Position numbers and translations under genes: made by a program
Virus record (IMG/VR): IMGVR_UViG_3300009430_000004
Location: 124,001-188,000 of that record
Reading direction: 5' to 3' (one strand)
DNA: 64,000 bases
Shown: positions 7,828 to 63,278 of the stretch, one piece after another
Layout: every line of letters starts with the position of its first letter
Position numbering within the stretch: position 1 is the stretch's first letter
Notes under the pieces: model-generated
The model's database searches: none
What the model was told of the DNA's origin: nothing
Seen by the model: the letters and a program-made list of their open reading frames with translations, nothing else

Positions 7828-7858
7828 CGTATTTTTGGAGCAAACACATATATATTAT
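7828..7858 (+). promoter_or_regulatory. Bipartite motif CGTA-N17-TATATATTAT
   Basis: CGTA TTTTTGGAGCAAACACA TATATATTAT; one of six copies with identical spacing. Confidence 0.75.
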
Positions 7859-7929
7859 TAATATAAGATGTAAATATATAATGCATCTAATCTATCCACT
7901 ATATAGTGGTATTCTATGGAGGGACAACC

Positions 7930-8601
7930 ATGATAAAATTTGAAAACTTAGACCTGCACGTTGATGCAAACATATTTCCAGAAAGATATAGAAAGGAAGC
8001 AATAGATTTCTTAACCCAGTTGGATAGAGAAGACTATGATACTCTATATTATGCTTGGAATGGTGAAAACTCTTTCGACACAATAGCAATGCTTAAAGGA
8101 ACACATTTCACAACTATGAAAACATTCATATTTGCTGAATTATACAGACTTCATACTAAAAAGGAGGGTATCACCGTTCAGTTTATAAAGAGTGTTTTCT
8201 TGAATGATCTTGGTGCAAAAGACATTATGACATGTCAGTTAAAAAGATACATTTCTTGTTACGAAACATATAATGATGCAAAGGATATGTTTGTAAACTG
8301 TGACGAAACTGATGTAATTAATGCCTTTAGAAGCCTAGCAATGGGTGCAGGTGTTCGATTACAAGAAATGGGTATGTCACCTTTTAACGGAAATAAAGTT
8401 CATTTAGGATTCTCACCAGATGGTTTATTTGAACTGATGGAGCTTGTTTGTGATGAAAGTCATGGACTTGATATGGGAGGATGTAATTGTAAAACCCATG
8501 AGACATATAATATCAAAATTATATCAGCTCTTGCTGCAATTGCGTTACTTAAGGGGCATCTTGAGAAAGGTTTAACAATGAAGGAGGTTGCTTGTGAATA
8601 G
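7930..8601 (+). CDS. Hypothetical protein
   Basis: GGAGGG RBS before ATG 7930 (MIKFENL...). Confidence 0.7.
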   Translation: MIKFENLDLHVDANIFPERYRKEAIDFLTQLDREDYDTLYYAWNGENSFDTIAMLKGTHFTTMKTFIFAELYRLHTKKEGITVQFIKSVFLNDLGAKDIMTCQLKRYISCYETYNDAKDMFVNCDETDVINAFRSLAMGAGVRLQEMGMSPFNGNKVHLGFSPDGLFELMELVCDESHGLDMGGCNCKTHETYNIKIISALAAIALLKGHLEKGLTMKEVACE

Positions 8602-8671
8602 GGTAAAGATGTTTGGCTTATGGATACAAAAGTTGATTACAGTACCTGGAAGGGTAATAGAACGACATAAG

Positions 8672-8705
8672 AAATAAGGACTCATCGTGAGTCCTTATTT
8701 TTTTT
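8672..8705 (+). terminator. Intrinsic terminator (possibly bidirectional)
   Basis: AAATAAGGACTCA-TCG-TGAGTCCTTATTT followed by a T tract. Confidence 0.8.
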
Positions 8706-8768
8706 CTATGCTCCGTTATATTTTTTTCTTTTCATCAACATTTAATTAATTAAATAAACAGTAAAGAG

Positions 8769-10022
8769 GTGAGAGATATGAATTACGCAATGGCGTCAAC
8801 ATCGTTAGCTCATACGTATGGAAATATAACTGCATTTATGACTGAGTTCGTAAAAGGGTTATTCCCTAAGAATTATTTCAAAACAGTCCACATAAGTTCT
8901 TCTATTGCTTATAGGCAGTTTAACGTTTTCCAAAATACTAATAAAGAGTTTATAAAGAAAAATAAGCCTATGCTTATAATACGACCAAGAATAGATATAA
9001 GTGATAATGATACATTCCTAAATAATACTTTCCTTACAACAAGGATAGATGATACTGTAACGGATTTGGATTTTAGTAATCTTCAACCGTTTATAGAAGA
9101 CAAAGAAAAGGGTGTATTCATACGATATCTTTTAAACAGATTGAAGATGAGTTTTGACATCACTATTATCACAGAAACACAGATGGAGCAAATCAACCAG
9201 GCACATTTTATAAAGAATAGAATTAGACAGGATAGACCTTTTTTCTTGTCAACATCTCTCGAAAGTTATGTGCCTAAGGAGTTCATGCAAATGCTCTCCA
9301 AGAATATAAATGTACCAATGTACGATGAAAATAATAACATAAAACCATTCTTGGATTATGTAAACGGTACATCGGTATATCCAATAACGTATAAGATGAA
9401 AAACTCTTCAGGTAATGATGAGTTCTTTAGATTTTATCCAGCTAATTTGGATACAATTTTAACTGGTTTATCAACAGACGATGGGTCTAAAAAAGGTTTT
9501 GTTTCTGACGCATTCGCTGTTAATTTCAGTTTAACTACGGAATTTTATACCGCTGGTTTATATTATTATTTGACCACCAACAAGAAGATAATAGAGGATG
9601 TTGAAATTTCAATTTTGAATGATGATACAAGTATTATTCCTGTATTTACTGTAAGTAATATCTATGATGTGAATTTACCTCATGGGTGGAATATGTACAC
9701 AGCTCCAATGTATAAAGTAGAGGTTGATAAAGTACCTGACACAATGAATATAAGTTCTTTATTCAACCAAAGCCTAGTAAAGACTATAGCTTATCATCTT
9801 GAAAAGGGGATACCTCTATCAACCTTCATTCACACCACTGTGATGAAGGACAATACAATTTTAGACCCCACTAAAGGGGAGTATAAAATAGACTTCGAAA
9901 AAATGGAATTAATTACTTATAACACAAATAAAGTATCCACATATAGACTAATAATTCATGTGAATACTTTGTATATCAATAATTTATTGGTTGATATCTT
10001 GAGACTAGACGAAGAGAGGTGA
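8769..10022 (+). CDS. Putative virion structural protein
   Basis: 417 aa; late promoter AACATTTAATTAA at 8737-8749; no enzyme motif. Confidence 0.45.
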   Translation: MRDMNYAMASTSLAHTYGNITAFMTEFVKGLFPKNYFKTVHISSSIAYRQFNVFQNTNKEFIKKNKPMLIIRPRIDISDNDTFLNNTFLTTRIDDTVTDLDFSNLQPFIEDKEKGVFIRYLLNRLKMSFDITIITETQMEQINQAHFIKNRIRQDRPFFLSTSLESYVPKEFMQMLSKNINVPMYDENNNIKPFLDYVNGTSVYPITYKMKNSSGNDEFFRFYPANLDTILTGLSTDDGSKKGFVSDAFAVNFSLTTEFYTAGLYYYLTTNKKIIEDVEISILNDDTSIIPVFTVSNIYDVNLPHGWNMYTAPMYKVEVDKVPDTMNISSLFNQSLVKTIAYHLEKGIPLSTFIHTTVMKDNTILDPTKGEYKIDFEKMELITYNTNKVSTYRLIIHVNTLYINNLLVDILRLDEER

Positions 10023-10029
10023 TAACCTC

Positions 10030-10581
10030 ATGGAGGGATTCAGGATTAAAATTATGGGCAATCAAAATATATACACTAATGAGGTAAATAACTTTTATTT
10101 ACCAAGGTACACCACCGTAGTACCTATAAATAGTGCTACTGCCGATATGGCAGAAAAAATACAATTTTTAGGGTTCACCATTGAAGATTTCGATGATGAA
10201 CAAATGAGAGTAACACTTCCATATCATTGGACTCACTTTGAGGTGAGTGATGAGCAGGAAGTAATAGTTGATGTGTTAGGTAGAATACGGGTTGTTATTG
10301 ATCCACATCGAAATAAAATGGAATTACTGCGAAGATTTGGATATGCAATTAATCATGTCAATATACCTGATAAAAAGGTATCTGGAATGCAGTGTTTCAT
10401 AACCGATATGAATAAGCCTGTGACTCAAATAGATATAAACCCACAACAATATCAACAATATTTAGATGAAGCTGGAGGCTCTGTTGACAATCTATTGAAT
10501 ATTTGCATAACTCAATGTCAAAATATACTAGATAAAGAGTTTCCAGACTGGAGAAATGAATTAGCTTATTGGAATGAATAA
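10030..10581 (+). CDS. Hypothetical protein
   Basis: 183 aa; GAGGTG RBS; terminator hairpin at about 10577-10613. Confidence 0.7.
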   Translation: MEGFRIKIMGNQNIYTNEVNNFYLPRYTTVVPINSATADMAEKIQFLGFTIEDFDDEQMRVTLPYHWTHFEVSDEQEVIVDVLGRIRVVIDPHRNKMELLRRFGYAINHVNIPDKKVSGMQCFITDMNKPVTQIDINPQQYQQYLDEAGGSVDNLLNICITQCQNILDKEFPDWRNELAYWNE

Positions 10582-10618
10582 TTAGATGGCATCCCAGCCA
10601 TCTAATTATTTTTATATT

Positions 10619-10628
10619 TATATATTAT
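10619..10628 (+). promoter_or_regulatory. Early-class promoter TATATATTAT
   Basis: Exact 10-mer upstream of ppk1. Confidence 0.65.
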
Positions 10629-10673
10629 TACAACAGATAAAAATACAGCGTACGTTATAAGGAGGGTAAAAAA

Positions 10674-12833
10674 ATGTCACATAGTGTTGCTATAACAGAT
10701 GTTTATAGAAGAGAGCTTTCAGAGTTTAATTCTAAATTCAACGACCCAAAGTTTTATATAAATAGAGAGTTAAGTTGGATAGAGTTTAACAAGAGAGTTT
10801 TACACCAAGCACTAAGAAAAGATATTCCTCTATTGGAAAGATTAAAGTTTCTAGGTATAACTAATTCAAATCTTGATGAATTCATAATGGTGAGATTTTC
10901 ATCTGTAATGAATAGAGTTATCAATGATTCTGAGGATGAAGATATATCAGGACTTAAACCCATAGATGAGTATCAGGAATTATTGGACCAAATCATGGAA
11001 TTTAAAAGTGTTCAAGCAGACTGTTATGATAGATTATCTAAAAAGTTAATTAAGACTAATATAATAATTAGTCAATATCAACAACTGAGCAAGAAGGAAA
11101 AGGAGCATGCAGAGAAGCTATTCTATAAAAATATCTTCCCATTACTAACTCCTATCACCTATGACACGACTAAAGATTTTCCATTGATAAGGTCTAAGCA
11201 ACTTAATATAGTTGTAGCATTAGAAGACAGAAAAAATGCTAATCTAAATGTAATCTCGATAATTCCCATTGATAGTGGATTGGATAGATTATATAAGATT
11301 GAAACCGACAATAAAGACGAGGATATTAAGTATATTTTATTAGAAGAGATAATTCATGCGTTCCTAAATAAGATATTCGTTAATAAGAATATCATATATA
11401 GTGGATGTATGAGAATTCTAAGGGAGGCTAATATTGAATTAGAACACAATAAAGACGTCTATATAATAGATAGGATGAAGCAAACCCTTATTCAAAGAGA
11501 GTTTAGTCGTCCGATATTCATGGATGTTCATGAGTCAATTCCTAGACATGTCCTAAAGATATTGACTAAGATATTTGATGTTGATAAGAAGCATGTCTTC
11601 AAATCAAAAGGTTTAGTAGACCCATCATTCTTAGCATCAATGCCTATAAAGAGCCATGCTTTGGAATACGAACACTTTGAACCACAATACCCTCAAGAGT
11701 TAATAGGTGAACATGATATGTTTACAGCCATAGATACAAATGACATAATCCTACATCATCCATATGAAAGCTTTGGACCTGTTATAAAATTCCTGGAACA
11801 TGCTGCTCAAGATGATAGTGTTTTAGTAATAAAACAAACTCTTTATAGAGTATCATCATATGAGTCACCAATAGTTGAAGCTTTATGTAAAGCTGCACAG
11901 AATGGTAAACAGGTTAGTGTTCTATTAGAGATTAAGGCTAGATTTGATGAAGATAGGAATATGTCCCTGATTGAGAAATTGAAATTATCTGGTTGTAAAA
12001 TAATCTATGGAGTTGAAGAGTTAAAAACTCACTGTAAGTTAATTCTTGTGGTTAGAAAAACAAGTAAAGGATTAAAGACATATTGTCATATAGGAACTGG
12101 TAATTATAATGATAAGACAGCAAAGATTTATACAGACTTATCTTATTTCACTTCAAATAATAAGATAGGTGAAGACCTGTTGTCAATATTTAATATATTA
12201 TCAGGATTTTCAGAACCTGCGAGTGAAGGAAACAAAATATTCTTCTCTCCATTCAATCTTAGAAGCAAATTATATACTCTGATTGATAGAGAGATAGAAA
12301 ATGCACGAAAGGGAAAGAAAGCATTTATAACTCTTAAATTAAATTCTCTATCTGATAAAGGAATGATACGGAAATTATACCAAGCTGCTTCATTCGGTGT
12401 TAAGATAACAATATTCTGTCGAGGAGTTTGTTCAATGAAACCTATCAATAAGAATATAACAATTAAAAGTCTTATAGGTAGATACCTTGAGCATAGTAGA
12501 ATATATTACTTTTACAATAATGATAAGTCTGAGATTTATATATCAAGTGCAGACTTGTTAACAAGAAACTTGGACAGAAGAGTAGAACTCTTAGTACCAT
12601 TAACAGATAGTGAAGTTAGGACAAAATTATTTGGCATTATAAGTGCTTATTTCAAAGACACTTGTAATACCTATATCATGAATTATAAGGGAGAGTATCA
12701 GCTATTAGCCAAGGAAGAATGTTTTAATCTGCATGAGTTCTTTATGGATGAAGCTATTAATAACTATAAGCTGAGAAATATTCCCAAGATAACATTTAAA
12801 AATAAAAAGAAATATGGGGATAGCAATGTTTAA
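10674..12833 (+). CDS. ppk1: Polyphosphate kinase 1
   Basis: NRELSWIEFNKRVL, SNLDEFIMVR, LHHPYESF, IKQTLYR, EIKARFDE, KTHCK (phospho-His motif), HIGTGNYN, GRYLEHSRIY, SSADLLTRNLDRRVE; full length. Confidence 0.96.
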   Translation: MSHSVAITDVYRRELSEFNSKFNDPKFYINRELSWIEFNKRVLHQALRKDIPLLERLKFLGITNSNLDEFIMVRFSSVMNRVINDSEDEDISGLKPIDEYQELLDQIMEFKSVQADCYDRLSKKLIKTNIIISQYQQLSKKEKEHAEKLFYKNIFPLLTPITYDTTKDFPLIRSKQLNIVVALEDRKNANLNVISIIPIDSGLDRLYKIETDNKDEDIKYILLEEIIHAFLNKIFVNKNIIYSGCMRILREANIELEHNKDVYIIDRMKQTLIQREFSRPIFMDVHESIPRHVLKILTKIFDVDKKHVFKSKGLVDPSFLASMPIKSHALEYEHFEPQYPQELIGEHDMFTAIDTNDIILHHPYESFGPVIKFLEHAAQDDSVLVIKQTLYRVSSYESPIVEALCKAAQNGKQVSVLLEIKARFDEDRNMSLIEKLKLSGCKIIYGVEELKTHCKLILVVRKTSKGLKTYCHIGTGNYNDKTAKIYTDLSYFTSNNKIGEDLLSIFNILSGFSEPASEGNKIFFSPFNLRSKLYTLIDREIENARKGKKAFITLKLNSLSDKGMIRKLYQAASFGVKITIFCRGVCSMKPINKNITIKSLIGRYLEHSRIYYFYNNDKSEIYISSADLLTRNLDRRVELLVPLTDSEVRTKLFGIISAYFKDTCNTYIMNYKGEYQLLAKEECFNLHEFFMDEAINNYKLRNIPKITFKNKKKYGDSNV

Positions 12834-13161
12834 AAAGATTCAATTATTACTACTGAAATTTAAACTGAGAATGTATGAGAGTGAAGCTAAATGGTATGAG
12901 GAGAGAGGTTGTTATGATGACTGGTATCATGAACATGGAATACCGAATCTAAAAAGGGATATTAAGGAGCTTGAAATAACTATCAAGAATCCTCAGCAAA
13001 GGACATTTTGTTATTGCCCTAATGAAGAATGTAATAATGAATTAATTAGTAGTGATAGTTTTGTAAGTGACGATGAGGTCGTCACTTACATATGCACAAA
13101 ATGTGGCACTGTATCTAAATGGTATTTTGATGCACCGTGTCCAATACTAATAAAGGAATAA
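12826..13161 (+). CDS. Small zinc-ribbon protein
   Basis: CPNEEC...CTKCG; likely start ATG 12826 overlapping the ppk1 stop region. Confidence 0.6.
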   Translation: MFKKIQLLLLKFKLRMYESEAKWYEERGCYDDWYHEHGIPNLKRDIKELEITIKNPQQRTFCYCPNEECNNELISSDSFVSDDEVVTYICTKCGTVSKWYFDAPCPILIKE

Positions 13162-13164
13162 AAA

Positions 13165-13199
13165 GATGAGATGTGTATATTACACATCTCATTTTTTTT
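13165..13199. terminator. Bidirectional terminator between convergent genes
   Basis: ATGAGATGTGTA-TAT-TACACATCTCAT flanked by A and T tracts. Confidence 0.75.
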
Positions 13200-13599
13200 C
13201 CTCTTTGTCGTCTTTTTTCTCAGTAGGGGAATCTTGGTCTGAAATACTCGAAAAATCTATCTTAATACCCTTTTTGATTTTTATAGCAGTCTCAACGAGC
13301 TTGATACACTTTGCTAACGTTGTAACATTTCCAAATAATTCAAATCCAAGTATACCGCTTATGAAAGCAAAGAATATTATTGTACTTACGTTTAATTTTG
13401 ATAACCACGTCGACTCCAAAAATATGAAGAGGAACGCAGTCCAGATTGCCCCTATTAACATTCTACATAGTCTCATCCTAGGTTCCTTATTGGTCATAGT
13501 GTCATATAGGTCCTTTATAAATGCACCAAAGAAACCGATCATGAAGTAGAATAACAGATTAATAGCAATTGTCATTAAATCTGCATAATTTAATTGCAT
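13189..13599 (-). CDS. Small 3-TM membrane protein, holin-like
   Basis: Three hydrophobic segments and a highly charged C-tail (EKKDDKEEKK); last gene of the late virion block. Confidence 0.5.
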   Translation of the reverse strand: MQLNYADLMTIAINLLFYFMIGFFGAFIKDLYDTMTNKEPRMRLCRMLIGAIWTAFLFIFLESTWLSKLNVSTIIFFAFISGILGFELFGNVTTLAKCIKLVETAIKIKKGIKIDFSSISDQDSPTEKKDDKEEKK

Positions 13600-13730
13600 A
13601 TTACTCAGAACCCCTTCCCTTTAAGAAAAAACCTATTATTCTTTGTATTAACACAAGAGGGTAAAAAGTTTTTCCTAAAAAAGTGTTATTTCTAATCATT
13701 TATACAAACCACAGTAAAAAGATATCCTTG

Positions 13731-14717
13731 TTAATCCTTTTTATTTTGCAAAATATATAAGTCATAAAGCTTATTATAAATAAATATCAGAGCGATTATT
13801 GCCAGTAGCATCAGAGCACTCATTGTCACAACTGTTATGTCCTTTATTAAAAGTCTTGTAGTGTAGTATCTGATAATTTCTGATTTTCGCTCATCTAGAT
13901 ATTTAAAATTATTGATATGTGATTTCTTTATTTGGTCATATAAATTAAAACCCTGGGTAATGATAATTTTATCATTCTCATTCTTTATACCACCAGATCC
14001 TATATCAGGTATACCAAATATGTCACCTCTACGTGTTATATATGAAGGAGTAAGAAATTCATAGGTTTTCAATCCTTCTATTCCCTCACTGTCAAACACC
14101 TCTTTTAATGCATCTAGTGTCATACTCGTTATCATTTTATGTTTAGGATTTTCCGACGGTAAGAATTCCCAGAAAATTATCTTATCTGACATTATAAGTA
14201 TTTCATCTACAGCAGCTTTAGCTAGTTTTTTATTAGCATGCATGTCATATTCAATATCCCAGGTTCTCTTATCACCAAACTTACTACAATTAGGTGAGAA
14301 ATCACCATTTATACCCCACGGCAAAGCAGCCCATGGGTCATTATTGTCATTTTCTATACCATTTAAATACACCCCTGTAAAATTAGCCCTGATTATTTCA
14401 GAGAATTTAGTATTCGGTATATTATTATCCAACTCATATTTGAGTTTATCCAAATCAGGATATGCCTGACGGAGTTGTTTTTCGATGTTAGTGGCTAATT
14501 CTTTACTCTGCATTAAAGATTTCTGACGATTTTCTTCAATAAGAGTAGTAACTAATTTCCACTCCATTTCTCGAACAACTTCAAGCCGTCTTTGACGATC
14601 CATCATCTCACTATTAACATCCACCTTATACAAATAGAAATTTGTTGATAGAAGTATCAACAAAATTAGAATTGTTGGCAGAATCGCATTAACGATTTTC
14701 TTCATCATATTACTCAT
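13731..14717 (-). CDS. Membrane protein with two TM helices flanking a large extracytoplasmic domain
   Basis: AAGGGAGG RBS before ATG 14717 (MSNMMKK...); N- and C-terminal TM segments; late promoter at 14777-14789. Confidence 0.65.
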   Translation of the reverse strand: MSNMMKKIVNAILPTILILLILLSTNFYLYKVDVNSEMMDRQRRLEVVREMEWKLVTTLIEENRQKSLMQSKELATNIEKQLRQAYPDLDKLKYELDNNIPNTKFSEIIRANFTGVYLNGIENDNNDPWAALPWGINGDFSPNCSKFGDKRTWDIEYDMHANKKLAKAAVDEILIMSDKIIFWEFLPSENPKHKMITSMTLDALKEVFDSEGIEGLKTYEFLTPSYITRRGDIFGIPDIGSGGIKNENDKIIITQGFNLYDQIKKSHINNFKYLDERKSEIIRYYTTRLLIKDITVVTMSALMLLAIIALIFIYNKLYDLYILQNKKD

Positions 14718-14800
14718 TTCCTCCCTTAGACAAAGGATAAGAAAACTTGCGGTTTGTAGTTTTGTATTTCTATCTTTTACTTTAATGTTGACAAAAGATA

Positions 14801-14836
14801 ATGACTGGATATCATTTAGATATCCAGTCATTTTTT
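14801..14836. terminator. Intrinsic terminator
   Basis: ATGACTGGATATC-ATTTA-GATATCCAGTCAT. Confidence 0.75.
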
Positions 14837-15518: not shown

Positions 15519-15526
15519 TCACCTCC

Positions 15527-16207: not shown

Positions 16208-16212
16208 CCCCT

Positions 16213-16830: not shown

Positions 16831-16929
16831 AGTTTTTCACCTCTTTTTCACTAACTTATTTTTATTATAATGTTTTAATATACAAAATAAAGTCTCCATA
16901 CTAACGTTTCATTAGTATGGAGAATATTA

Positions 16930-53319: not shown

Positions 53320-53320
53320 T

Positions 53321-53347
53321 GGGCTAGAAATCTAGCCCTATTTTTTT
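53321..53347 (+). terminator. Intrinsic terminator between gyrB and gyrA
   Basis: GGGCTAGA-AA-TCTAGCCC followed by a T tract, then TATATATTAT at 53352-53361. Confidence 0.75.
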
Positions 53348-53387
53348 AAAATATATATTATTGATATAGCAATGATGAGGGAGGTAA

Positions 53388-55793: not shown

Positions 55794-55827
55794 GGGTATC
55801 CCCTACTTCACTCTTATTTTAAAGGAG

Positions 55828-56466
55828 TTGAAAATAATGACAATCAATTTCTATGATGTTGTAACAAAAATGAATGAATTAAAGAATAAGGTATCATATA
55901 TAAGGATAGATTTTAATATTGAACAAATAAAACCTGAGAATCAAGATGCCCCTATAATAACACCAAGATACACGGTTGCTTTTATCGAGCCACCTAGATT
56001 TATTGTAAAGATAAAAATATATAAATCTTTGCATGATATGTTATTGAGGGAGATTGAATTTGACTTAAGTCAGTTCAATGTAGCATTTGAATATGTAAAG
56101 GCATTATGTATCACAGATGACCATGATCGTCATATTAGCACAATAGTCTATAATTATAATTCGGCTCAAATAGAACAACATATGGAGAAGGTAAAGAACT
56201 TCTACAGCTTCGTTGGTAATTTCAATATTAGGAATGGTGTCTATAGATCGGTTGAAGAAGCTTATAATTCCTTTGAAGCTTATAGTAGAAGATTCTATGC
56301 TTCATTTGCTTCCAGAATACCACCTATAGAGATGGGTAAGATAAATAATATGAAAGAAGAAATGAAGCAGTTATCAAGGATAATAATGGATGAGAAATAT
56401 ATGTATATTATAAAGGACACATTAAACTTCTCATTGTTGGATGATGAGAAACTATACTGGTTATAA
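55828..56466 (+). CDS. Hypothetical protein
   Basis: 212 aa; AAGGAG RBS; terminator at about 56465-56495. Confidence 0.65.
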   Translation: MKIMTINFYDVVTKMNELKNKVSYIRIDFNIEQIKPENQDAPIITPRYTVAFIEPPRFIVKIKIYKSLHDMLLREIEFDLSQFNVAFEYVKALCITDDHDRHISTIVYNYNSAQIEQHMEKVKNFYSFVGNFNIRNGVYRSVEEAYNSFEAYSRRFYASFASRIPPIEMGKINNMKEEMKQLSRIIMDEKYMYIIKDTLNFSLLDDEKLYWL

Positions 56467-56538
56467 AAGGAGGATTATCCTCCTTTATTTTTTTTCCAAT
56501 TAATTGGAACAAATTAGTAATTACCATAAGAAGGGGAG

Positions 56539-57063
56539 ATGGGGATGGATAGACAACCAAGGATTATAGATGAAACCTTTTTAATGGAGTTCGCTAAATC
56601 CTATAACACACTGAAAGACGATGGCATGATTCCAGTTGGCATCAAAAAGAAGCTAATGGTTGAATTTGAATGCAAAGAATCGTCTTACTACAGATATCTT
56701 CAACTAGCAAGAGATAAAGGGTATGTGTCCGACAGTTATGAGGAGAACACGACAGCTATGAGAAAAAGAGAAGCCAAACTCAGAGAAGCTCATAAAGTTA
56801 TTGAACCTGATATGGCTGCAACTCTTAGAGAGATACTGTACGGTAATGAAACAAAGGTAGAGGAGAAAGCTCCTGAAAAAGAAAGCGACATATTTATAAG
56901 TTTACATAGTGGTTATGAAGACTCTAAAGATGCTGAAAAATATTTTGTTGTAAAAGAGGAGTCAAGTATCGCTCAACCCACGCCAGAACCGCCCAGTAGG
57001 GTTAAACCTTCAATCGGTACTATCTTGATGGATTACGTCAAGAAAATTTTCACAAAAAGATAA
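56539..57063 (+). CDS. Hypothetical protein, possible N-terminal helix-turn-helix
   Basis: 'LMVEFECKESSYYRYLQLARDKGYV' is HTH-like; late promoter at 56508-56520. Confidence 0.45.
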   Translation: MGMDRQPRIIDETFLMEFAKSYNTLKDDGMIPVGIKKKLMVEFECKESSYYRYLQLARDKGYVSDSYEENTTAMRKREAKLREAHKVIEPDMAATLREILYGNETKVEEKAPEKESDIFISLHSGYEDSKDAEKYFVVKEESSIAQPTPEPPSRVKPSIGTILMDYVKKIFTKR

Positions 57064-57101
57064 GATATACGGCTAAAAACCGTATATCTTATCTTATTTT
57101 T

Positions 57102-58268
57102 TTATGCTTCTTCCTTTTCATAAAGGACATTAAATACTTCCCTTATATCCATCTTACCATCAAACATATCCTCATTGAACTTTCTTAACCAAGCTGAAAG
57201 CATTTGTTGCTTCTCATATGTTGGGTCATTGAGGTAGTTTTCATAGTAACCTTTATAAGCTGCAAGGTTATCCTTTAATTCTTCCTTCAAATCCTTCGGA
57301 AGGTTTGGATCATCCAAATCCCTTTCGAGTTTGTTAATCATATTCTTCATTCTTGTCTGATTCTTAGGATGTACACCTATGAATGTAGACATGATATTCT
57401 GCATAATTCCAGCTATGTCATCAATAACATTAAGAACTGGAACATTTCTAACTATTCTGTTGTACATTTTATTTGGGTCATTCTGCAACTTATCTAACGC
57501 TGTTGCAAGTGGCTGTGCATACCCATATGATGCAGCAAAGCTATCAGAGAATCTCTCCATACCATATCTAAATAGGTTTGATATGTCGAAATTAACAACC
57601 TGTTGAGCCATAGCAAGTGGGCTACCAAGTAATGGTCCAGAAATGTGATAAAGAAGTCTATTAAGCCCAGCACCTATATTATAGAATACTGATAGATACT
57701 TCTTAAAGAACCTTTCAACACCCATTCTGATTTCAGTTATTAACTGTACAACCCAATGCTGAACAGCCCAGCCTATAGGACTGTATAACAGAGTTGGTAT
57801 TGTGCATAGGAAGTAAAATGGAGATGTGTCAAAATTGTGTCCTATCTCATGAAGTATGATAGCCATCATTTCTTTCTCATTCAATTTAGTCTGAGAAATA
57901 AGTGCTGTGTCAAGGAACACATAGATTTTCAATCTCTCATTGATAAATTTACCTGATTCTTCCCTTTTCTCGATGTTCTTAAGATACATCATAGGGAAAG
58001 ATGATATTGGTGTGCAGGCATTAGGTACTGAATCTTGCCAGTGAATTTTAATATACTTAACTCCAAAGAAATCAGCAAGAATCTTCTGTAATTTCTGGTT
58101 AGGTTCTGATTTATCTATATCAGTCATCGCCCTGAAAATACTCTTATCGTTATCCTTTCTGATTATCTCTGCAATTTTAGCAAGTTCTGCCTCCGCTGCT
58201 TCGAATTGTTTAGGCTTACCTAGATAAGCTTCCATAACAGGGTTATTTTTTCTTGAAAAAATAGCCAC
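57102..58268 (-). CDS. Zincin (M48-like) metalloprotease-domain protein, probably virion-associated
   Basis: AIILHEIGH, ERFSDSFAASYGY..LATALDKL, HP...R; late promoter at 58304-58316. Confidence 0.7.
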   Translation of the reverse strand: MAIFSRKNNPVMEAYLGKPKQFEAAEAELAKIAEIIRKDNDKSIFRAMTDIDKSEPNQKLQKILADFFGVKYIKIHWQDSVPNACTPISSFPMMYLKNIEKREESGKFINERLKIYVFLDTALISQTKLNEKEMMAIILHEIGHNFDTSPFYFLCTIPTLLYSPIGWAVQHWVVQLITEIRMGVERFFKKYLSVFYNIGAGLNRLLYHISGPLLGSPLAMAQQVVNFDISNLFRYGMERFSDSFAASYGYAQPLATALDKLQNDPNKMYNRIVRNVPVLNVIDDIAGIMQNIMSTFIGVHPKNQTRMKNMINKLERDLDDPNLPKDLKEELKDNLAAYKGYYENYLNDPTYEKQQMLSAWLRKFNEDMFDGKMDIREVFNVLYEKEEA

Positions 58269-58303
58269 AATTTTATCATCCCTTTCATTTATTAGTTTTC
58301 CAT

Positions 58304-58333
58304 TTAATTTATTGTTTTAAAACAATTAAATAA
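58304..58333. promoter_or_regulatory. Back-to-back divergent late promoters
   Basis: Near-palindrome TTAATTTATTGTTTTAAAACAATTAAATAA gives AACA-N6-TAA on both strands. Confidence 0.7.
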
Positions 58334-58358
58334 GATAAAATAATAAAGGGGTGATATT

Positions 58359-59519
58359 ATGGCAAATGATAGAGTATTATTAAATGAATTATACCCTTTA
58401 ATAGAGAAGGGTCTATCCAAAAAAGAAAATACCCAGAAGCTTAAGCTGGCTGTAAGCCAATTCCTTGATAGGAACAATGAAAAATTAACCACTAATGGTC
58501 CAGTATATAGAATTATATTCTCAGAAGAGGATGCTAATAAACTATACGAAGCTATAGAAGTTGACCCGCTTACAATCAAGGGAATAATTAATAGGTCACC
58601 GACAATTAAGAGTCAGTGGCAGATAATGAATAATCCTTTCAACTCTGCAATAGCCTTGACTATTAGATATTATAAGGTTAACAAGAACCCTGAAATGGTT
58701 AATGCAACGCTTATATATTTAACAATGTCAATGTATCCATCATTACACTATAAGTATTTTCAATATGAACCTAATGAAAATATAATGAATTATACCATCA
58801 ATAATCTATCAAATAAGTTTAAAATCAAACAAACTGGTACAATTTATGCTGCCTTAGTAGATACTGTACAAGTTAGTGATAGGACTTATACTGACGATTT
58901 GATACGTGGTACTGATAAGGATATCGTTGACTATATCGAAGCAGTTAAGACAAGAATGAATAGTTTGCTTAGAAAAATATCAAATGAATTTTATGAGAAT
59001 GATAAAAAAAAGAATTATCTTAATACTGAAAGCGATAGCTTCGAAGAAGATAATTATCATGAAGCTGATAGCAATATCTACGCTGTGGAACGTGTTACTA
59101 ACAATGTCGTCCTAAAACTTATAGTTAATGGACCAAATATACAGCTAGTTAATATTGCGGCTAAAATGAGCCAAGTAAGTGTTAGTGAACTGAGGAATTA
59201 TGTTAATACCTTGGTTATCGGGGAGAATCGTGAACAAATTAAGACTGTTGTTGAATGTATTTTATTCTTATATTTATTTGATTCACAGAACAAAGTTGAG
59301 GATATAGGAAGCAATAAATTCCTATTCTATTGTCTTGAAGTATATAAGAAATCTAATACTACAGACGAGAATATCATAAAGATTAAGAAGATTCTTGATG
59401 AATGGTTGGAAGACTTAGGAACATACAAAAAAACTCAGAGACTTGCTACTATCAATAATTTTAGAAGGGCTTTGTTTACCTTCTTCGTTCTAAGTATTCA
59501 ACATACGGGAAATAGCTAG
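58359..59519 (+). CDS. Conserved hypothetical alpha-helical (probably virion) protein
   Basis: 386 aa; late promoter at 58321-58333. Confidence 0.55.
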   Translation: MANDRVLLNELYPLIEKGLSKKENTQKLKLAVSQFLDRNNEKLTTNGPVYRIIFSEEDANKLYEAIEVDPLTIKGIINRSPTIKSQWQIMNNPFNSAIALTIRYYKVNKNPEMVNATLIYLTMSMYPSLHYKYFQYEPNENIMNYTINNLSNKFKIKQTGTIYAALVDTVQVSDRTYTDDLIRGTDKDIVDYIEAVKTRMNSLLRKISNEFYENDKKKNYLNTESDSFEEDNYHEADSNIYAVERVTNNVVLKLIVNGPNIQLVNIAAKMSQVSVSELRNYVNTLVIGENREQIKTVVECILFLYLFDSQNKVEDIGSNKFLFYCLEVYKKSNTTDENIIKIKKILDEWLEDLGTYKKTQRLATINNFRRALFTFFVLSIQHTGNS

Positions 59520-59686
59520 AAAAAAAAGCGGGGTCAGAGATAAAAGCATAAAGCCTGGCGTATAGCCCCCCATTGACCCCCCCATCATGTGGGAAATTAA
59601 ACCATGTAAACCATGGATGATGGCTGTTTAAATAGTCACCACATTATCATTTCCCAAGGAATTGACATATTATATATACACACATG
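59520..59686 (-). ncRNA. Candidate structured non-coding RNA (~165 nt)
   Basis: GC-enriched, no credible ORF; lies downstream of the bipartite promoter (59690-59720); several complementary segments; ends in a GGGGTCA...TGACCCC stem + T8. Confidence 0.55.
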
Positions 59687-59689
59687 ATA

Positions 59690-59720
59690 ATAATATATAT
59701 TTTATTAGTGTGACTTTACG
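59690..59720 (-). promoter_or_regulatory. Bipartite motif CGTA-N17-TATATATTAT
   Basis: Minus strand reads CGTA AAGTCACACTAATAAAA TATATATTAT. Confidence 0.75.
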
Positions 59721-59760
59721 AATTATAAAAAAATAAGGAAGATGATTAATTTCATCTTCC

Positions 59761-60300
59761 TTATTTTTCTAACTCATTTATTAACTTATTCATTATAACA
59801 GTATTACTTATATATCGTAATACAGTTGGATCATTACTTAATGCCTGCCTGCATATATCTTCAGTTTGAATCTTGCAGAATTGTAATGCTCTAGGAGTTT
59901 TCTTAACAGCTTCCATGCATATTTCTTCAGTCTGTTCTTTTACAAATTGTAATGCAGTACCATTCTGCCTAACAGCTTCTATACACAGCTCATGAGTTTG
60001 GTTATCCTTTATCATATTAAGTATCCTACCATTACGCTTAACAGCTTCAAGCTTCATTTCATATGTAGGATTCATTATAAACTGATATGACAAAGGATTG
60101 TTTCTAATAGCCATTAGACATAATTCCTCAGTTTGGCTTTTAACATATTCCAAGGCATCACCATTCTGTGTAATGGCTACACGACATGCTTCCTCAGTTT
60201 GTGGACTAAAATACCTCAATAACAATCCGTCACGCCTTAAATCGTCAATAATAACAGATGGTAAATGATAGTGGTTTCCTCTCATAGCAAATTCTCCCAT
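59761..60300 (-). CDS. DUF4116-like helical repeat protein
   Basis: Tandem ~24-aa repeats 'QTEE.C..AV.QNG.ALQFVK'. Confidence 0.75.
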   Translation of the reverse strand: MGEFAMRGNHYHLPSVIIDDLRRDGLLLRYFSPQTEEACRVAITQNGDALEYVKSQTEELCLMAIRNNPLSYQFIMNPTYEMKLEAVKRNGRILNMIKDNQTHELCIEAVRQNGTALQFVKEQTEEICMEAVKKTPRALQFCKIQTEDICRQALSNDPTVLRYISNTVIMNKLINELEK

Positions 60301-60338
60301 AGATTTTATACCTCCTAATTATATTAGTATCTATATTA

Positions 60339-60369
60339 ATAATATATACTTAGCGTGTCGTAAAATACG
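60339..60369 (-). promoter_or_regulatory. Bipartite motif CGTA-N17-TATATATTAT
   Basis: Minus strand reads CGTA TTTTACGACACGCTAAG TATATATTAT. Confidence 0.75.
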
Positions 60370-60398
60370 AAAAAAATAAGGATGGTGTAAAACCATCC

Positions 60399-60542
60399 TT
60401 ATTTTCTTTTTTTCTCTCTCTTAACGAATTTGTATGTTCCGTCATCATTCGTTACAAGCATCGGTGCATTATGAATTGCATACCCCATAAACACCACAGT
60501 TACTACAACACAGGCTATAAGAATCTTTACTACTAATGGCAT
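60399..60542 (-). CDS. Small single-TM membrane protein (47 aa, not in ORF track)
   Basis: MPLVVKILIACVVVTVVFMGYAIHNAPM...KREKKRK*; own TATATATTAT (60577-60586) and terminator (about 60374-60404). Confidence 0.6.
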   Translation of the reverse strand: MPLVVKILIACVVVTVVFMGYAIHNAPMLVTNDDGTYKFVKREKKRK

Positions 60543-60599
60543 ACCCCATACCCCTAATATATTATTTCATACTGTGATAATATATAAATATAACTTCTA

Positions 60600-60938
60600 T
60601 TAGGTCAATACTATTTTATACCCAATAAACTTTTGTATTGCTTCTCTTACACTAGGCTTATAACAAGCCACACAATTATCAATCGCAGTTTCATAGAGAT
60701 TTATGGCAATTATAACGCCATTGTTGTCAAATTCTATATCCCCACGAGTTGCCCCTGGTAATCTTATTCCATAAAAATTTGGTATAGTATTATCACATAG
60801 CATATATGTGAATCCACCATAATCTATACAAGATTTATACACATCTAATAAGTGTTCATCCATAGTTCTAGTTAGATCATTTACATACCTATCATTATTA
60901 CACTTTTCATACGGCTTCGTTGATACTAACTCTTCCAT
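60600..60938 (-). CDS. Hypothetical protein
   Basis: AGGAGG RBS before ATG 60938 (MEELVSTK...). Confidence 0.65.
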   Translation of the reverse strand: MEELVSTKPYEKCNNDRYVNDLTRTMDEHLLDVYKSCIDYGGFTYMLCDNTIPNFYGIRLPGATRGDIEFDNNGVIIAINLYETAIDNCVACYKPSVREAIQKFIGYKIVLT

Positions 60939-60948
60939 AACAAACCTC

Positions 60949-61347
60949 CTAAAATGAATTAAGAATTTCGGTAAAATAGAATAGTAAATCATGTGTTCTG
61001 ACAATGTTATTATTAAGAATAACAGAATCAATATTGTCAACTATCTTTATATAATACCTCTTATCCTTTTGTACTATTAAACCTTTCTTTGGGTCCATCA
61101 TCTTGAGGATTCTCACAAATAAATCAACGGACTTTTTCTCATTATAGAAAAATATCAATGAATCCTCATAGTTTGTTTCAATTGTATTCACGACAATATC
61201 CTTAAATCCCTCTTGCTCATGATAATGTAGCATTGTCAAAGGATATATATTAACATCTGTACTCGTCTTTGTACCTAAAACCGTTCGTATTGCATTAGGT
61301 TGCTTCTCTATAAATAAAGTTTTTGGAAATGATTTAATAAAATCCAT
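60949..61347 (-). CDS. Hypothetical protein
   Basis: 132 aa; AGGAGGGG RBS. Confidence 0.65.
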   Translation of the reverse strand: MDFIKSFPKTLFIEKQPNAIRTVLGTKTSTDVNIYPLTMLHYHEQEGFKDIVVNTIETNYEDSLIFFYNEKKSVDLFVRILKMMDPKKGLIVQKDKRYYIKIVDNIDSVILNNNIVRTHDLLFYFTEILNSF

Positions 61348-61462
61348 AATATCCCCTCCTATCTATTATATAATGGTTGGGAATATTTTATATAAGAACT
61401 CAATTTTTTCTTTACGAAAAAAACAATTAAATAAGACTAACTAAATAGAAAGGGGTGAGTTT

Positions 61463-62182
61463 ATGGCTATAACAAAACAAACTAGAAAACAAATGGAAGC
61501 CTTAATATATTCCGTTTTCGATGCTCTCGACCCTTCCAAAACAAATAGTAATAAATACAAGGATTTCTTCGGGGAAATGTCGGATTCACAGTTCGATTCA
61601 TTTTTTAGAAATTTCTTTAAGGATGAAAATCAGTATTTAACTCTTGATGTTGTGGATTATGAGAGAGATTTTAAGATTGAAAATGTTGAGCAAGCAGCTA
61701 AGATACTTGGGGTTCCATTATTTGAGAAAGTAGTTATGCCATTTGTTAATAAAAATACAGATAAACCAGTCATTACTAAATATGAAGTACCTGTGGGATA
61801 TGTGCATGTTAAGAGGGTTCAGCAGATGCTCAGTAAGAAGAACACTACTTCTACTGAAATAGCTTCCCGTTCAGCATTAACAGGACAGGTTGTTGGAAAG
61901 GATAAGAATGCAAGAGACTCTGATGCTGAAAACTTCGCATTAGTTACGCTTAATGCTAATGAGACATTAAGAGAGTTTATGGGTCCAAGAGCTGACGACT
62001 TAGTAATGAAGAATGAAATGTACGCTTCAATAGCACAAAAGGGATATGTTTCCCTAGACCAATTAACTAACCATGTTGAAAATAAGACTACTTTAAATGC
62101 CCTCGATGTACATCTAATAGGTATGGGTATTAAGTCAGACCTTGTTACTCAAGGATTATTGGTTAAGAAATCACTAAAATAA
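61463..62182 (+). CDS. rpoB: Split RNA polymerase beta subunit, C-terminal fragment (probably virion RNAP)
   Basis: VPVGYVHVKRVQQMLSKK, RSALTGQV, ENFAL, LREFMGPRADD match the beta C-terminal motifs (GxxYxxKL, YSxxTQQP, EVWAL, LQExLTxKSDD); late promoter at 61422-61434. Confidence 0.8.
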   Translation: MAITKQTRKQMEALIYSVFDALDPSKTNSNKYKDFFGEMSDSQFDSFFRNFFKDENQYLTLDVVDYERDFKIENVEQAAKILGVPLFEKVVMPFVNKNTDKPVITKYEVPVGYVHVKRVQQMLSKKNTTSTEIASRSALTGQVVGKDKNARDSDAENFALVTLNANETLREFMGPRADDLVMKNEMYASIAQKGYVSLDQLTNHVENKTTLNALDVHLIGMGIKSDLVTQGLLVKKSLK

Positions 62183-62185
62183 AAA

Positions 62186-62220
62186 AAATAAGGTATGGAG
62201 AAATCCATACCTTATTTTTA
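62186..62220. terminator. Bidirectional terminator
   Basis: AAATAAGGTATGGA-GAAA-TCCATACCTTATTT. Confidence 0.8.
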
Positions 62221-62224
62221 TTTT

Positions 62225-62554
62225 TTAATATGTTACTATATACTCATCATCTTCCCCATCGAATACACGTTTTGCTTCCATAACGGATTTGTATAAATCG
62301 AATAGAGTAATCGGATGAAAAGTATTAAGATACTCAATAAAAGTTCTTCCATCATTAACTATAGCCAAGGATTTATCACGATCAAATGTAATCGTAACCT
62401 TTTGAGTATTATCAAATTCATTGACAAATATAAACTTTGGAAAAACGTTATTAACGTTTACAAACCTAGTAGTTTGACAAACCTCATGATTTATTGATGT
62501 TCTAACCTTGTTGTACATTGACTGATAATCTTTTAATTCAAACATTTCTTTCAC
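62225..62554 (-). CDS. Hypothetical protein
   Basis: 109 aa; AAGGAGG RBS, GTG start. Confidence 0.65.
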   Translation of the reverse strand: MKEMFELKDYQSMYNKVRTSINHEVCQTTRFVNVNNVFPKFIFVNEFDNTQKVTITFDRDKSLAIVNDGRTFIEYLNTFHPITLFDLYKSVMEAKRVFDGEDDEYIVTY

Positions 62555-62564
62555 CCTCCTTATA

Positions 62565-63152
62565 TTAACCGTAAACTATAATGCCTTTTTTGGTACTGAT
62601 ACATCCAGTTAACCAACCAAAGGAATCTTGTTCACCTGCAAATACTCTATAACCTGCTCCTTCGACCTTCTTAATATTGGTCCAATTACATCTTCCATTA
62701 CTGGATATCAATGCACCGCAAGCTAACCCATCTATAATACGAGCAGCATCATCCTCATTATCACTATTCATGTCAATATATAATCGACCTTCATAGTCAT
62801 ATGACTTAACTTCAGATTCACCAGATTCAACTTTCTTGAGCATGTCAAGAAGTTCTGTCAAGTAATCCTTAGTTTCTGGATGTATCTTCTCTTCAAGAGG
62901 TGAAGGGTAATTATCAAAATGTCTCCAACCGAGACTGAGTAAGTATTCAAAAGCTTCAGCATTTCTATTACTGCTGAAATCTGAAACAGTCATTGAGATT
63001 TTGCTATAATCTGTTCTAACATTGAAAGTCTTAGCTTCCTCATCCTTTTGTCCGAGTTCTTTCCTTGTTAGGTTAACTCCATCAAAAGATACAATCTCAA
63101 GAATGCTACCCATATAGGTTTTAATAAAAACTGGTTTTTCTAATCTTATCAT
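62565..63152 (-). CDS. Hypothetical protein
   Basis: 195 aa; GGGAGG RBS; C-terminal 'GEQDSFGWLTGCI' motif. Confidence 0.7.
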   Translation of the reverse strand: MIRLEKPVFIKTYMGSILEIVSFDGVNLTRKELGQKDEEAKTFNVRTDYSKISMTVSDFSSNRNAEAFEYLLSLGWRHFDNYPSPLEEKIHPETKDYLTELLDMLKKVESGESEVKSYDYEGRLYIDMNSDNEDDAARIIDGLACGALISSNGRCNWTNIKKVEGAGYRVFAGEQDSFGWLTGCISTKKGIIVYG

Positions 63153-63247
63153 GATTTAATTCCTCCCACAGAATCAAAATATTTTTCACTAGCATCTATA
63201 TTTACTAGCGGAACATACAAATATATTATCTACGTATGTACACAATA

Positions 63248-63278
63248 ATAATATATATTCATCATGTTTTAATTTACG
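63248..63278 (-). promoter_or_regulatory. Bipartite motif CGTA-N17-TATATATTAT
   Basis: Minus strand reads CGTA AATTAAAACATGATGAA TATATATTAT. Confidence 0.75.

What the first reader, a model, noticed from the sequence alone, without database searches (positions are those of the whole stretch)
7828..63278. Strictly spaced bipartite motif CGTA-N17-TATATATTAT marks a separate regulon of orphan genes and small RNAs
Seen: six intergenic copies with exactly 17 nt between CGTA and TATATATTAT, at 7828-7858 (+) and 45902-45932, 49124-49154, 59690-59720, 60339-60369 and 63248-63278 (all -). The spacers are otherwise unrelated. Eight other TATATATTAT copies (4339, 10619, 41357, 49187, 50154, 53352, 60577, 63724) lack the CGTA at that position and mostly precede core genes (RNAP beta', ppk1, nuclease/DnaB, gyrA, tubulin). 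The CGTA copies precede only small orphan genes and two ORF-less units. Knowledge: TATATT(A)-type motifs are the early promoters of phiKZ/AR9-like phages; I know of no described upstream element for them. No TTGACA-like box is conserved, so this is not a plain host sigmaA promoter. Inference: a second recognition element for the virion RNAP or a phage factor, defining an immediate-early (host-takeover or anti-defence) class.
Basis: partly seen in the sequence, partly recalled or inferred. Interest (0 to 1): 0.82.

Follow-up and report, generated by a model that had tools for sequence, protein, structure and literature searches.

The report
Upstream CGTA box on early promoters
A subset of this giant phage's early promoters carries a second, strictly spaced "CGTA box" about 35 bases before the predicted RNA start. 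The same box occurs in related phages, including the lab phage AR9, where published data show that box-bearing genes peak earliest in infection.

Summary
Six of the 14 perfect TATATATTAT cores in the window have CGTA exactly 17 nt upstream, where shuffles give none. The box extends to (Y)CGTAWWKT.

The core is the published AR9 virion-RNA-polymerase early promoter, which has a purine start 7 nt after it. That puts the box at about -37 to -30, a -35/-10-like geometry.

It replicates:
- Outside the window in the same genome, 2 of 17 further cores have it.
- In 55 loci from relatives chosen without reference to the motif, CGTA occurs at N17 six times and at no neighbouring spacing. All six are positional orthologues with unrelated spacers.
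- In AR9, 9 of 41 mapped early promoters carry CCGTATYRAA at N18.
- In the first 50 kb of phiR1-37, two promoters carry it.

The box is not found on its own more often than chance.

My re-analysis of published AR9 RNA-seq shows box-bearing genes are front-loaded. The median 5-min/20-min FPKM ratio is 1.13 against 0.21 (p = 8e-5).

In the window the box drives only genes with no assignable function (three without any family match, one DUF4116 protein) and two ORF-less units.

Best reading: a -35-like element defining an immediate-early subclass of virion-polymerase promoters. What reads the box is unknown. No RNA data exist for this phage. I found no description of the box in the literature.

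The parts
7828..7865 (+). Bipartite early promoter 1. Box CGTATTTT at 7828-7835, core 7849-7858, predicted start A7865. It drives ORF 7906-8601 (231 aa, no family).
   Evidence: Box-bearing promoters sit at the same position (just downstream of the RNAP beta' gene) in relatives with 36-65% beta' identity.
45895..45932 (-). Bipartite early promoter 2. Box CGTATATT at 45932-45925, core 45911-45902, predicted start G45895. It drives ORF 45494-45790 (98 aa, no family).
49117..49154 (-). Bipartite early promoter 3. Box CGTAAAGT at 49154-49147, core 49133-49124, predicted start G49117. It diverges from the box-less promoter at 49187(+).
49008..49117 (-). Predicted ORF-less transcript 1, about 110 nt. 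It forms two hairpins, the second followed by a U-rich tail, and runs convergent to the 3' end of the Dda-like helicase gene (47833-49005).
   Evidence: Fold -27 kcal/mol, z = -4.0. Sequence. No Rfam family. No homologue in the fetched loci. The terminator was not called by the simple scan.
59683..59720 (-). Bipartite early promoter 4. Box CGTAAAGT at 59720-59713, core 59699-59690, predicted start G59683.
59518..59683 (-). Predicted ORF-less transcript 2, about 166 nt. It ends in a G+C-rich irregular hairpin plus T8 and runs convergent to gene 58359-59519. This unit is weakly supported.
   Evidence: Fold z = -0.7, not better than shuffles. The only ORF (32 aa) runs through the terminator. The terminator was not called by the simple scan.
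60332..60369 (-). Bipartite early promoter 5. Box CGTATTTT at 60369-60362, lying directly after the T-run of an intrinsic terminator. Core 60348-60339, predicted start A60332. It drives ORF 59761-60300 (179 aa, DUF4116 repeats).
63241..63278 (-). Bipartite early promoter 6. Box CGTAAATT at 63278-63271, core 63257-63248, predicted start G63241. It drives ORFs 62565-63152 (195 aa) and 62225-62554 (109 aa), neither with a family.
4339..63733 (.). Comparison set: eight box-less TATATATTAT promoters. They start at 4339+, 10619+, 41357+, 49187+, 50154+, 53352+ and 63724+, and at 60586- (5' end of the core on the minus strand). They precede nvRNAP beta', ppk1, the exonuclease-DnaB operon, small ORFs, a 159-aa ORF plus gyrB, gyrA, tubulin and a 47-aa membrane ORF respectively.

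Best explanation
The CGTA box, (Y)CGTAWWKT at about -37 to -30, is a -35-like upstream promoter element. It works in cis, at one fixed distance, together with the -10-like core TATATATTAT (-16 to -7) of the early promoters used by the injected virion RNA polymerase of AR9-like jumbo phages.

Read as hexamers, TAWWKT-N17-TATTAT has the geometry of a bacterial -35/-10 promoter. The transcription machinery present at the very start of infection reads both halves. That machinery is either the virion RNAP itself or a specificity factor travelling with it. Box-bearing promoters therefore form an immediate-early subclass whose transcripts are already maximal at the first time point and then lose ground to the other early genes. 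In this phage the subclass drives poorly conserved genes of unknown function and two possible small RNAs.

Shown: the motif, its strict spacing, its conservation and positional orthology, its absence as a stand-alone site, and the distinct timing in AR9.

Inferred: that it is contacted by the polymerase complex, that it raises initial promoter use, and that timing in this uncultivated phage follows AR9.
For: - Non-random and strictly spaced: 6 of 14 cores in the window, 0 expected.
- Same genome outside the window: 2 of 17 further cores have CGTA at N17 and drive a 185-aa and a 78-aa gene without Pfam hits.
- The core equals the AR9 early promoter AAATATATATTAT-N6-G(+1) (PMC5312081). In the metagenomic loci fetched, both promoter classes show T at -1 and G or A at the predicted +1.
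- Motif-independent sample: 55 loci around RNAP beta' orthologues hold 106 cores. CGTA occurs at N17 six times and never at N12-16 or N18-28.
- All six of those sit just after the beta' gene, as window promoter 7849 does. The relatives have 36-65% beta' identity, the spacers are unrelated, and the downstream gene is not conserved.
At least 12 jumbo-size contigs other than the two that hold this phage carried 2-4 hits each.
- AR9 has 9 of 41 mapped early promoters with CCGTATYRAA at N18. phiR1-37 has two at N17 in its first 50 kb, for g078 (CGTA) and g077 (TGTA).
- No stand-alone use. In the window the 8-mer occurs 9 times (about 12 expected), 6 of them at promoters. In AR9, 8 of 16 copies are at promoters and the other 8 are close to the chance expectation of 5.3.
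- Timing in AR9 (Table S4). The median 5'/20' FPKM ratio is 1.13 (n=9) against 0.21 (n=28), Mann-Whitney p = 8e-5. Median 5-min FPKM is 296 against 85, p = 0.04. Restricted to early-only genes the ratio is 0.97 against 0.21, p = 0.0016.
- phiR1-37 g078 (CGTA box) is classed EARLY and has the highest early-phase level among the EARLY-class genes I read in that 50 kb.
- phiKZ-type early promoters are published as conserved out to -30, so contacts that far upstream by a virion RNAP are plausible.
Against: - There is no transcript data for this phage, so the start sites and the class timing are extrapolated.
- In AR9, independence from protein synthesis was shown only for two box-less promoters, P087 and P104.
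- AR9 TSS step heights at 20 min, by inspection of Table S2, are not clearly higher for box-bearing promoters (not tested statistically). The box may therefore affect timing or shut-off rather than strength.
- The AR9 comparison rests on three time points and one FPKM value per gene, and it is my post-hoc grouping.
- In phiR1-37, box-less promoters (g011, g029) are also EARLY, and the TGTA variant (g077) is flat.
- No sigma-like subunit is known for virion RNAPs.
Confidence: 0.55

Rival explanations
1. The box is an operator. A phage protein made early, or a virion-borne protein, binds CGTAWWKT next to the polymerase site and shuts these promoters off after the first minutes. On this reading the box marks genes to be silenced rather than promoters that fire better.
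For: Box-bearing AR9 transcripts stay flat or fall from 5 to 20 to 40 min while other early-only genes rise 3-8 fold. By inspection of AR9 Table S2, 20-min TSS heights are not clearly higher. All six window promoters already have perfect cores.
Against: The element is short, asymmetric and always in one orientation, with no conserved dyad. It is never over-represented away from promoters. CGTA is kept between phages whose RNAP beta' subunits are only about 31-34% identical to the window's. Median 5-min FPKM is higher for the box-bearing class.
Confidence: 0.25
2. The box is the site of a separate activator or alternative specificity factor, analogous to the T4 MotA box. That factor recruits the polymerase to a second promoter class. 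The box is not read by the polymerase itself.
For: Fixed distance to the core, class-specific use and family-wide conservation. The spacing differs by one base between clades, N17 against N18 in AR9, as might follow from co-evolution with a factor.
Against: Box-bearing transcripts are already maximal at 5 min in AR9, so any factor would have to be packaged in the virion. No candidate was identified here.
Confidence: 0.15
3. The pattern is chance, or shared descent of duplicated promoter cassettes, with no function for CGTA.
For: The motif was found by eye in one AT-rich window. Three copies abut terminator T-runs.
Against: 0 expected in shuffles. Spacers and flanks are unrelated. It is replicated outside the window, in a motif-independent sample of relatives, in AR9 and in phiR1-37. 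Positional orthologues keep the box and its spacing while the spacer turns over.
Confidence: 0.02

Closest known systems
AR9 / PBS1 early (virion RNAP) promoter, AAATATATATTAT-N6-G(+1) (Lavysh et al. 2017, PMC5312081)
   Same: The 10-nt core is identical and a purine lies 7 nt after it. It sits upstream of early operons in a phage with split multisubunit RNAPs.
   Different: The published consensus and the GenBank promoter features (13 nt) stop at the core. The upstream CCGTATYRAA box on 9 of 41 AR9 promoters, and its link to timing, are not described in the papers I could search.
phiKZ / 201phi2-1 early promoters (extended AT-rich motif conserved at -10, -20 and -30; PMC11512511)
   Same: These are virion-RNAP promoters whose conservation reaches about -30. 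That shows this kind of polymerase can read far upstream.
   Different: [quoted passage not shown] Here a G+C-containing box is present on only a subset (8 of 31 cores in the sequenced part of this genome, 9 of 41 promoters in AR9) and splits the early class in two.
Bacterial sigma70/sigmaA -35 element
   Same: Position and geometry match: TAWWKT at -35 to -30, a 17-bp spacer, then TATTAT at -12 to -7. The spacer length is strictly constrained.
   Different: The sequence is unrelated to TTGACA. Published work reports that jumbo-phage RNAPs have no sigma homologue and are independent of host RNAP.
T4 middle promoters (MotA box replacing -35)
   Same: A class-specific upstream box at a fixed distance from a shared -10-type element defines a temporal class of phage genes (my knowledge of T4; mentioned).
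   Different: T4 uses host RNAP plus the phage-made MotA and AsiA, so that class is delayed. Here the box-bearing class is the earliest.

Membership tests
AR9-type virion-RNAP early promoter | AT-rich core matching (AAA)TATATATTAT centred near -10 | tested here: met
   All six have the perfect 10-mer. It is identical to the AR9 consensus.
AR9-type virion-RNAP early promoter | Purine start 6-7 nt downstream of the core | tested here: met
   The seventh base after the core is G in four promoters and A in two. The same preference holds in 101 box-bearing and 188 box-less sites from the metagenomic loci fetched. This is sequence-level evidence only.
AR9-type virion-RNAP early promoter | Mapped 5' ends and early transcription that resists rifampicin and chloramphenicol | not testable with these tools
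   No RNA run was listed for this phage. The only holder is a groundwater DNA metagenome.
AR9-type virion-RNAP early promoter | Genome encodes split multisubunit RNAP beta/beta' genes | tested here: met
   ORF 4616-6028 matches jumbo-phage beta'. PF00623 and PF00562 genes are in the flanks.
sigma70-type -35/-10 promoter | -35 hexamer resembling TTGACA | tested here: not met
   The -35 to -30 hexamers are TATTTT, TATATT, TAAAGT and TAAATT. The consensus scan finds no more sigma70-like sites than shuffles do.
sigma70-type -35/-10 promoter | Two elements separated by 17 +/- 1 bp | tested here: met
   Spacing is exactly N17 in this genome and in the relatives sampled, and N18 in AR9.
phiKZ-type extended early promoter | Upstream (-20/-30) conservation shared by the early promoters as a class | tested here: not met
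   Only 8 of 31 cores in 116.8 kb of this genome and 9 of 41 AR9 promoters carry the box.
Repressor operator | Dyad symmetry or repeated half-sites | tested here: not met
   The box is asymmetric and there is no conserved partner in the position profile.
Repressor operator | Sites also used away from this promoter type | tested here: not met
   Non-promoter copies are at or below chance in the window and close to chance in AR9.
T4 MotA-box middle promoter | Delayed class that depends on phage proteins made after infection | tested here: not met
   In AR9 the box-bearing genes have the highest 5-min/20-min ratios. This is a proxy from a relative, not from this phage.

The most novel reading that the evidence does not exclude
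The CGTA box is the -35-type half of a truly bipartite promoter read by a still unidentified sigma-like specificity module of the injected virion RNA polymerase. It is conserved from Bacillus phage AR9 and Yersinia phage phiR1-37 to uncultivated groundwater jumbo phages. It can therefore be used as a sequence tag to pick out the immediate-early gene set (candidates for host takeover or anti-defence) and small RNAs in hundreds of jumbo-phage genomes.
Probability: 0.35. Interest if true: 0.8.

Novelty: new variant of a known kind. Interest (0 to 1): 0.62.

Why it matters
How the sigma-less virion RNA polymerases of jumbo phages recognise promoters is unknown. A second, strictly spaced element gives a concrete handle for footprinting, mutagenesis and the search for the protein that reads it.

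It also splits the 'early' class of AR9-like phages into two groups with different kinetics, which the published AR9 analysis did not separate.

Finally, it offers a simple sequence tag for the first genes a jumbo phage expresses. These are mostly genes of unknown function that are not conserved between relatives. They are natural candidates for host-takeover and counter-defence functions, including in uncultivated phages that can only be studied from sequence.

Tried and rejected
The spike is specific to this clade, not a general property of AT-rich viral DNA.
- Megablast of 12 kb of the window against GenBank phages gave nothing.
- No RNA run was listed. The only run is a DNA metagenome kept as contigs, so I did not use read laying: it could not show start sites.
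- Rfam and tRNA scans of the window were empty.
- The two ORF-less units have no homologue in any fetched locus. The simple terminator scan did not call their terminators. Unit 2 folds no better than shuffles.
- Pfam, PHROGs and the ESM Atlas gave nothing for three of the four box-driven coding units and only a domain of unknown function (DUF4116) for the fourth.
- A plain host sigmaA promoter was rejected because there is no TTGACA-like element.
- Duplicated cassettes were rejected because spacers and flanks are unrelated and the orthologous sites differ.
- The phiR1-37 replication was stopped after the first 50 kb. There was one CGTA promoter and one TGTA promoter, too few for a test, and box-less promoters there are also EARLY.
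- I walked only 52.8 kb beyond the window. About 100 kb of the 218-kb contig was not read.
- Slip: for minus-strand ORFs my first references included the stop codon and dropped the start codon. This is harmless for the profile searches, but it made one exact look-up fail. It was corrected.
Full report
**1. The observation**

The pattern CGTA-N17-TATATATTAT occurs six times in the window, at exactly the coordinates and strands given. None is expected in 100 dinucleotide-preserving shuffles. TATATATTAT itself occurs 14 times against 2.2 expected.

In the 45 nt upstream of those 14 cores, CGTA is found only at a spacing of 17. None of the 47 cores with one mismatch has it there.

Aligning the six copies shows a longer element, (C/T)CGTA[AT][AT][GT]T. 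The 13 nt between it and the core are unrelated. Three copies lie directly after the T-run of an intrinsic terminator and three do not.

**2. What the core is, and where the box sits**

The window comes from a 218-kb IMG/VR contig, 3300009430_000004. It corresponds to about contig 124001-188000, from a groundwater metagenome. A second contig from sample 3300025106 matches it wherever they were compared, apart from one base near promoter 2.

The phage has split multisubunit RNAP genes. Its beta' is only 31-34% identical to those of phiR1-37, BpSp and AR9.

The 10-mer equals the experimentally mapped early promoter of Bacillus phage AR9, AAATATATATTAT-N6-G(+1). That promoter is used by the injected virion RNA polymerase (PMC5312081).

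In the window the seventh base after the core is G in four box-bearing promoters and A in two. Across the metagenomic loci fetched, both promoter classes show T at -1 and a purine at +1.

With that start, the core spans -16 to -7 and the box spans -37 to -30. Read as hexamers, TAWWKT-N17-TATTAT has the geometry of a bacterial -35/-10 promoter, although the upstream sequence is nothing like TTGACA.

**3. Replication outside the window**

- *Same genome.* I walked 52.8 kb beyond the window. There I found 17 more cores, two of them with CGTA at N17. These are at window coordinates 70666+ and 88601+. They drive a 185-aa and a 78-aa gene without Pfam hits. From base composition I estimate about 0.05 expected (my arithmetic). 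The total so far is 8 of 31 cores in 116.8 kb.
- *Relatives sampled without reference to the motif.* I fetched 55 loci around RNAP beta' orthologues in IMG/VR. They hold 106 distinct cores. CGTA occurs at N17 six times and never at N12-16 or N18-28.
- *Positional orthology.* All six of those lie just downstream of the beta' gene, where window promoter 7849 lies. The phages have 36-65% beta' identity, the spacers are unrelated, and the gene behind the promoter is not conserved. This is footprinting evidence for selection on the box and on its spacing.
At least a dozen contigs of 85-320 kb, other than the two that hold this phage, carried 2-4 hits each. An untargeted scan over all spacings showed no N17 spike in viruses at large. 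The signal is therefore specific to this clade.
- *AR9.* The whole AR9 genome has 28 perfect cores. Seven carry CGTA, all at N18, as (A)CCGTATYRAA. The paper's table of 41 mapped early start sites adds two more with the core variant CATATATTAT, making nine.
- *N18 type in IMG/VR.* The N18 form is otherwise rare: AR9 with 6 hits, two other jumbo contigs with 3 and 2, and the rest singletons.
- *phiR1-37.* In its first 50 kb, the promoters of g078 (CGTAACTGTA) and g077 (TGTAACTGTA) have the element at N17 from the core GATATATTAT or CATATATAAT.

**4. The box is not used on its own**

CGTAWWKT occurs nine times in the window, with about 12 expected. Six of the nine are the promoters.

In AR9, CGTATYRAA occurs 16 times. 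Eight are at promoters. The other eight are close to the chance expectation of 5.3.

The box has no dyad symmetry and always points the same way relative to the core.

**5. Does it define a class?**

There is no RNA for this phage, so I used AR9. I took the published FPKM values at 5, 20 and 40 min (Table S4) for the first gene behind each mapped early promoter.

| Measure | Box-bearing | Box-less | Mann-Whitney p |
|---|---|---|---|
| Median 5'/20' ratio | 1.13 (n=9) | 0.21 (n=28) | 8e-5 |
| Median 5'/40' ratio | 0.96 | 0.17 | 4e-5 |
| Median 5-min FPKM | 296 | 85 | 0.04 |
| Median 5'/20' ratio, early-only genes | 0.97 (n=8) | 0.21 (n=9) | 0.0016 |

Many box-less genes also have late promoters. 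The last row repeats the test on genes that meet the paper's 'early' criterion.

The box-bearing promoters therefore mark the AR9 early genes that are already maximal at 5 min and then lose ground.

The genes involved are g047, g048, g069, g108, g120, g169, g190, g234 and g253. They are small membrane or hypothetical proteins and one intron-borne HNH endonuclease. None is a replication or RNAP gene.

In phiR1-37, g078 is classed EARLY and has the highest early-phase level among the EARLY-class genes I read in that 50 kb. However, the box-less g011 and g029 are EARLY too, and g077 is flat. In that phage, then, the box is not required for an early pattern.

**6. What the box-bearing promoters drive in the window**

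- ORF 7906-8601 (231 aa), ORF 45494-45790 (98 aa), and ORFs 62565-63152 plus 62225-62554 (195 and 109 aa). None has a Pfam, PHROG or Atlas lead.
- ORF 59761-60300, a DUF4116 repeat protein.
- Two units with no credible ORF.

*Unit 1* (49117 to about 49008, 110 nt) folds into two hairpins, the second followed by a U-rich tail, with z = -4.0.

*Unit 2* (59683 to about 59518) ends in a G+C-rich hairpin plus T8, but folds no better than shuffles.

Neither unit matches Rfam or any fetched locus. The simple scan did not call their terminators. They are predictions only.

The box-less promoters precede nvRNAP beta', ppk1, an exonuclease-phosphoesterase-DnaB operon, gyrB, gyrA and tubulin. Two of them precede small ORFs.

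**7. Mechanism**

The most economical reading is a -35-like promoter element read together with the core by whatever transcribes the DNA in the first minutes. That is the virion RNAP or a factor packaged with it.

Arguments for this reading:
- one exact spacing per genome;
- fixed orientation;
- no stand-alone sites;
- conservation of CGTA between phages whose RNAP beta' subunits are only about 31-34% identical to the window's;
- higher 5-min levels in AR9;
- the published fact that phiKZ and 201phi2-1 early promoters are conserved out to -30.

The main rival is an operator for rapid shut-off. It fits the flat or declining AR9 profiles, and by inspection the 20-min start-site signals are not clearly stronger.

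The two readings are not exclusive. Chloramphenicol time courses and in vitro transcription would separate them.

A separately acting activator remains possible only if it is packaged in the virion. Chance or cassette duplication is excluded.

**8. Comparison with what is known, and novelty**

The core and its use are known (AR9, MarsHill, phiR1-37).

I found no description of an upstream box, or of a split of the early class, for AR9-like phages. I checked:
- the AR9 transcriptome paper and its tables;
- the 2020 review of jumbo-phage RNAPs, which describes only a roughly 10-nt motif centred at -10;
- the 2026 jumbo-phage review;
- the MarsHill preprint;
- full-text searches for the motif itself.

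The library lacks most subscription journals, including the 2016 AR9 genome paper. Its GenBank record, however, annotates only the 13-nt core.

Upstream conservation as such is known for phiKZ-type early promoters. I therefore rate this a new variant of a known kind: a conserved, class-splitting -35-like box on virion-RNAP promoters.

**9. Verdict**

The element and its link to an immediate-early pattern hold in AR9. What reads the box, the function of the genes it drives, and the small RNAs all remain untested.

Noticed in passing
window 10674-12833 (+): A full-length polyphosphate kinase 1 gene (all four PPK1 domains, E-values down to 8.5e-69) sits behind a box-less early promoter in a jumbo phage.
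   Followed up: partly
L347 9130-10486, 4100-7255 (window coordinates about -15235 to -13879 and -20265 to -17110): Thymidylate synthase, DHFR, dCMP deaminase, a thymidylate/deoxynucleoside kinase and a ribonucleotide reductase are clustered upstream of the window. The phage probably makes thymine DNA, unlike AR9 and phiR1-37, whose genomes contain uracil.
   Followed up: no
L346 11411-12750 (window coordinates about 83198-84537): A gene with precomputed hits to Anti-Pycsar Apyc1 and Lactamase_B_2 is followed by an LPD28-domain gene. This is a candidate counter-defence locus.
   Followed up: no
L345 12992-13471 (-) (window coordinates about -1569 to -1090): A 159-aa protein with a GGDEF (diguanylate cyclase) domain hit lies just left of the window.
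   Followed up: no
L343 8239-9369 (window coordinates about 63784-64914, +): A tubulin (PF00091, PhuZ-like) gene starts about 50 nt downstream of the box-less promoter core at 63724-63733. The gene runs off the window.
   Followed up: yes
window 60399-60542 (-): The box-less promoter at 60586 drives a 47-aa ORF with one hydrophobic helix and a lysine/arginine tail. It ends at the terminator that abuts the next CGTA box.
   Followed up: no
L056, L133, L162, L132, L173, L177, L192, L204 (contigs 3300045988_*): In several related contigs the box-bearing promoters are followed by near-identical leaders starting GAATAGA. One type forms a perfect 12-bp hairpin right at the predicted 5' end. These look like dispersed paralogous immediate-early units.
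   Followed up: no
L243, L244 (about 9817 and 9898), L238 (five promoters), L123 4280: Other clades show other upstream elements at the same place: TGTAAAA at N18, and CYCAA ending 14 nt before the core (four of the five L238 promoters). One orthologue of a box-bearing promoter has a 2-nt insertion that moves CGTA to N19. The upstream half may diversify by clade.
   Followed up: partly
AR9 g283 (KU878088.1 246121-246306, -), Table S4 of PMC5312081: This 61-codon 'hypothetical protein' has FPKM of 116,547 at 5 min and more than 1,000,000 at 20 min, far above any other AR9 gene. It is not in the early-promoter table and may be a non-coding RNA.
   Followed up: no
window 49106-49120 (-): The predicted 5' end of ORF-less unit 1 lies in a 12-nt palindrome, TGTGTATACACA. 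Units 4 and 6 start with similar GTGT(A/G)TA strings.
   Followed up: no
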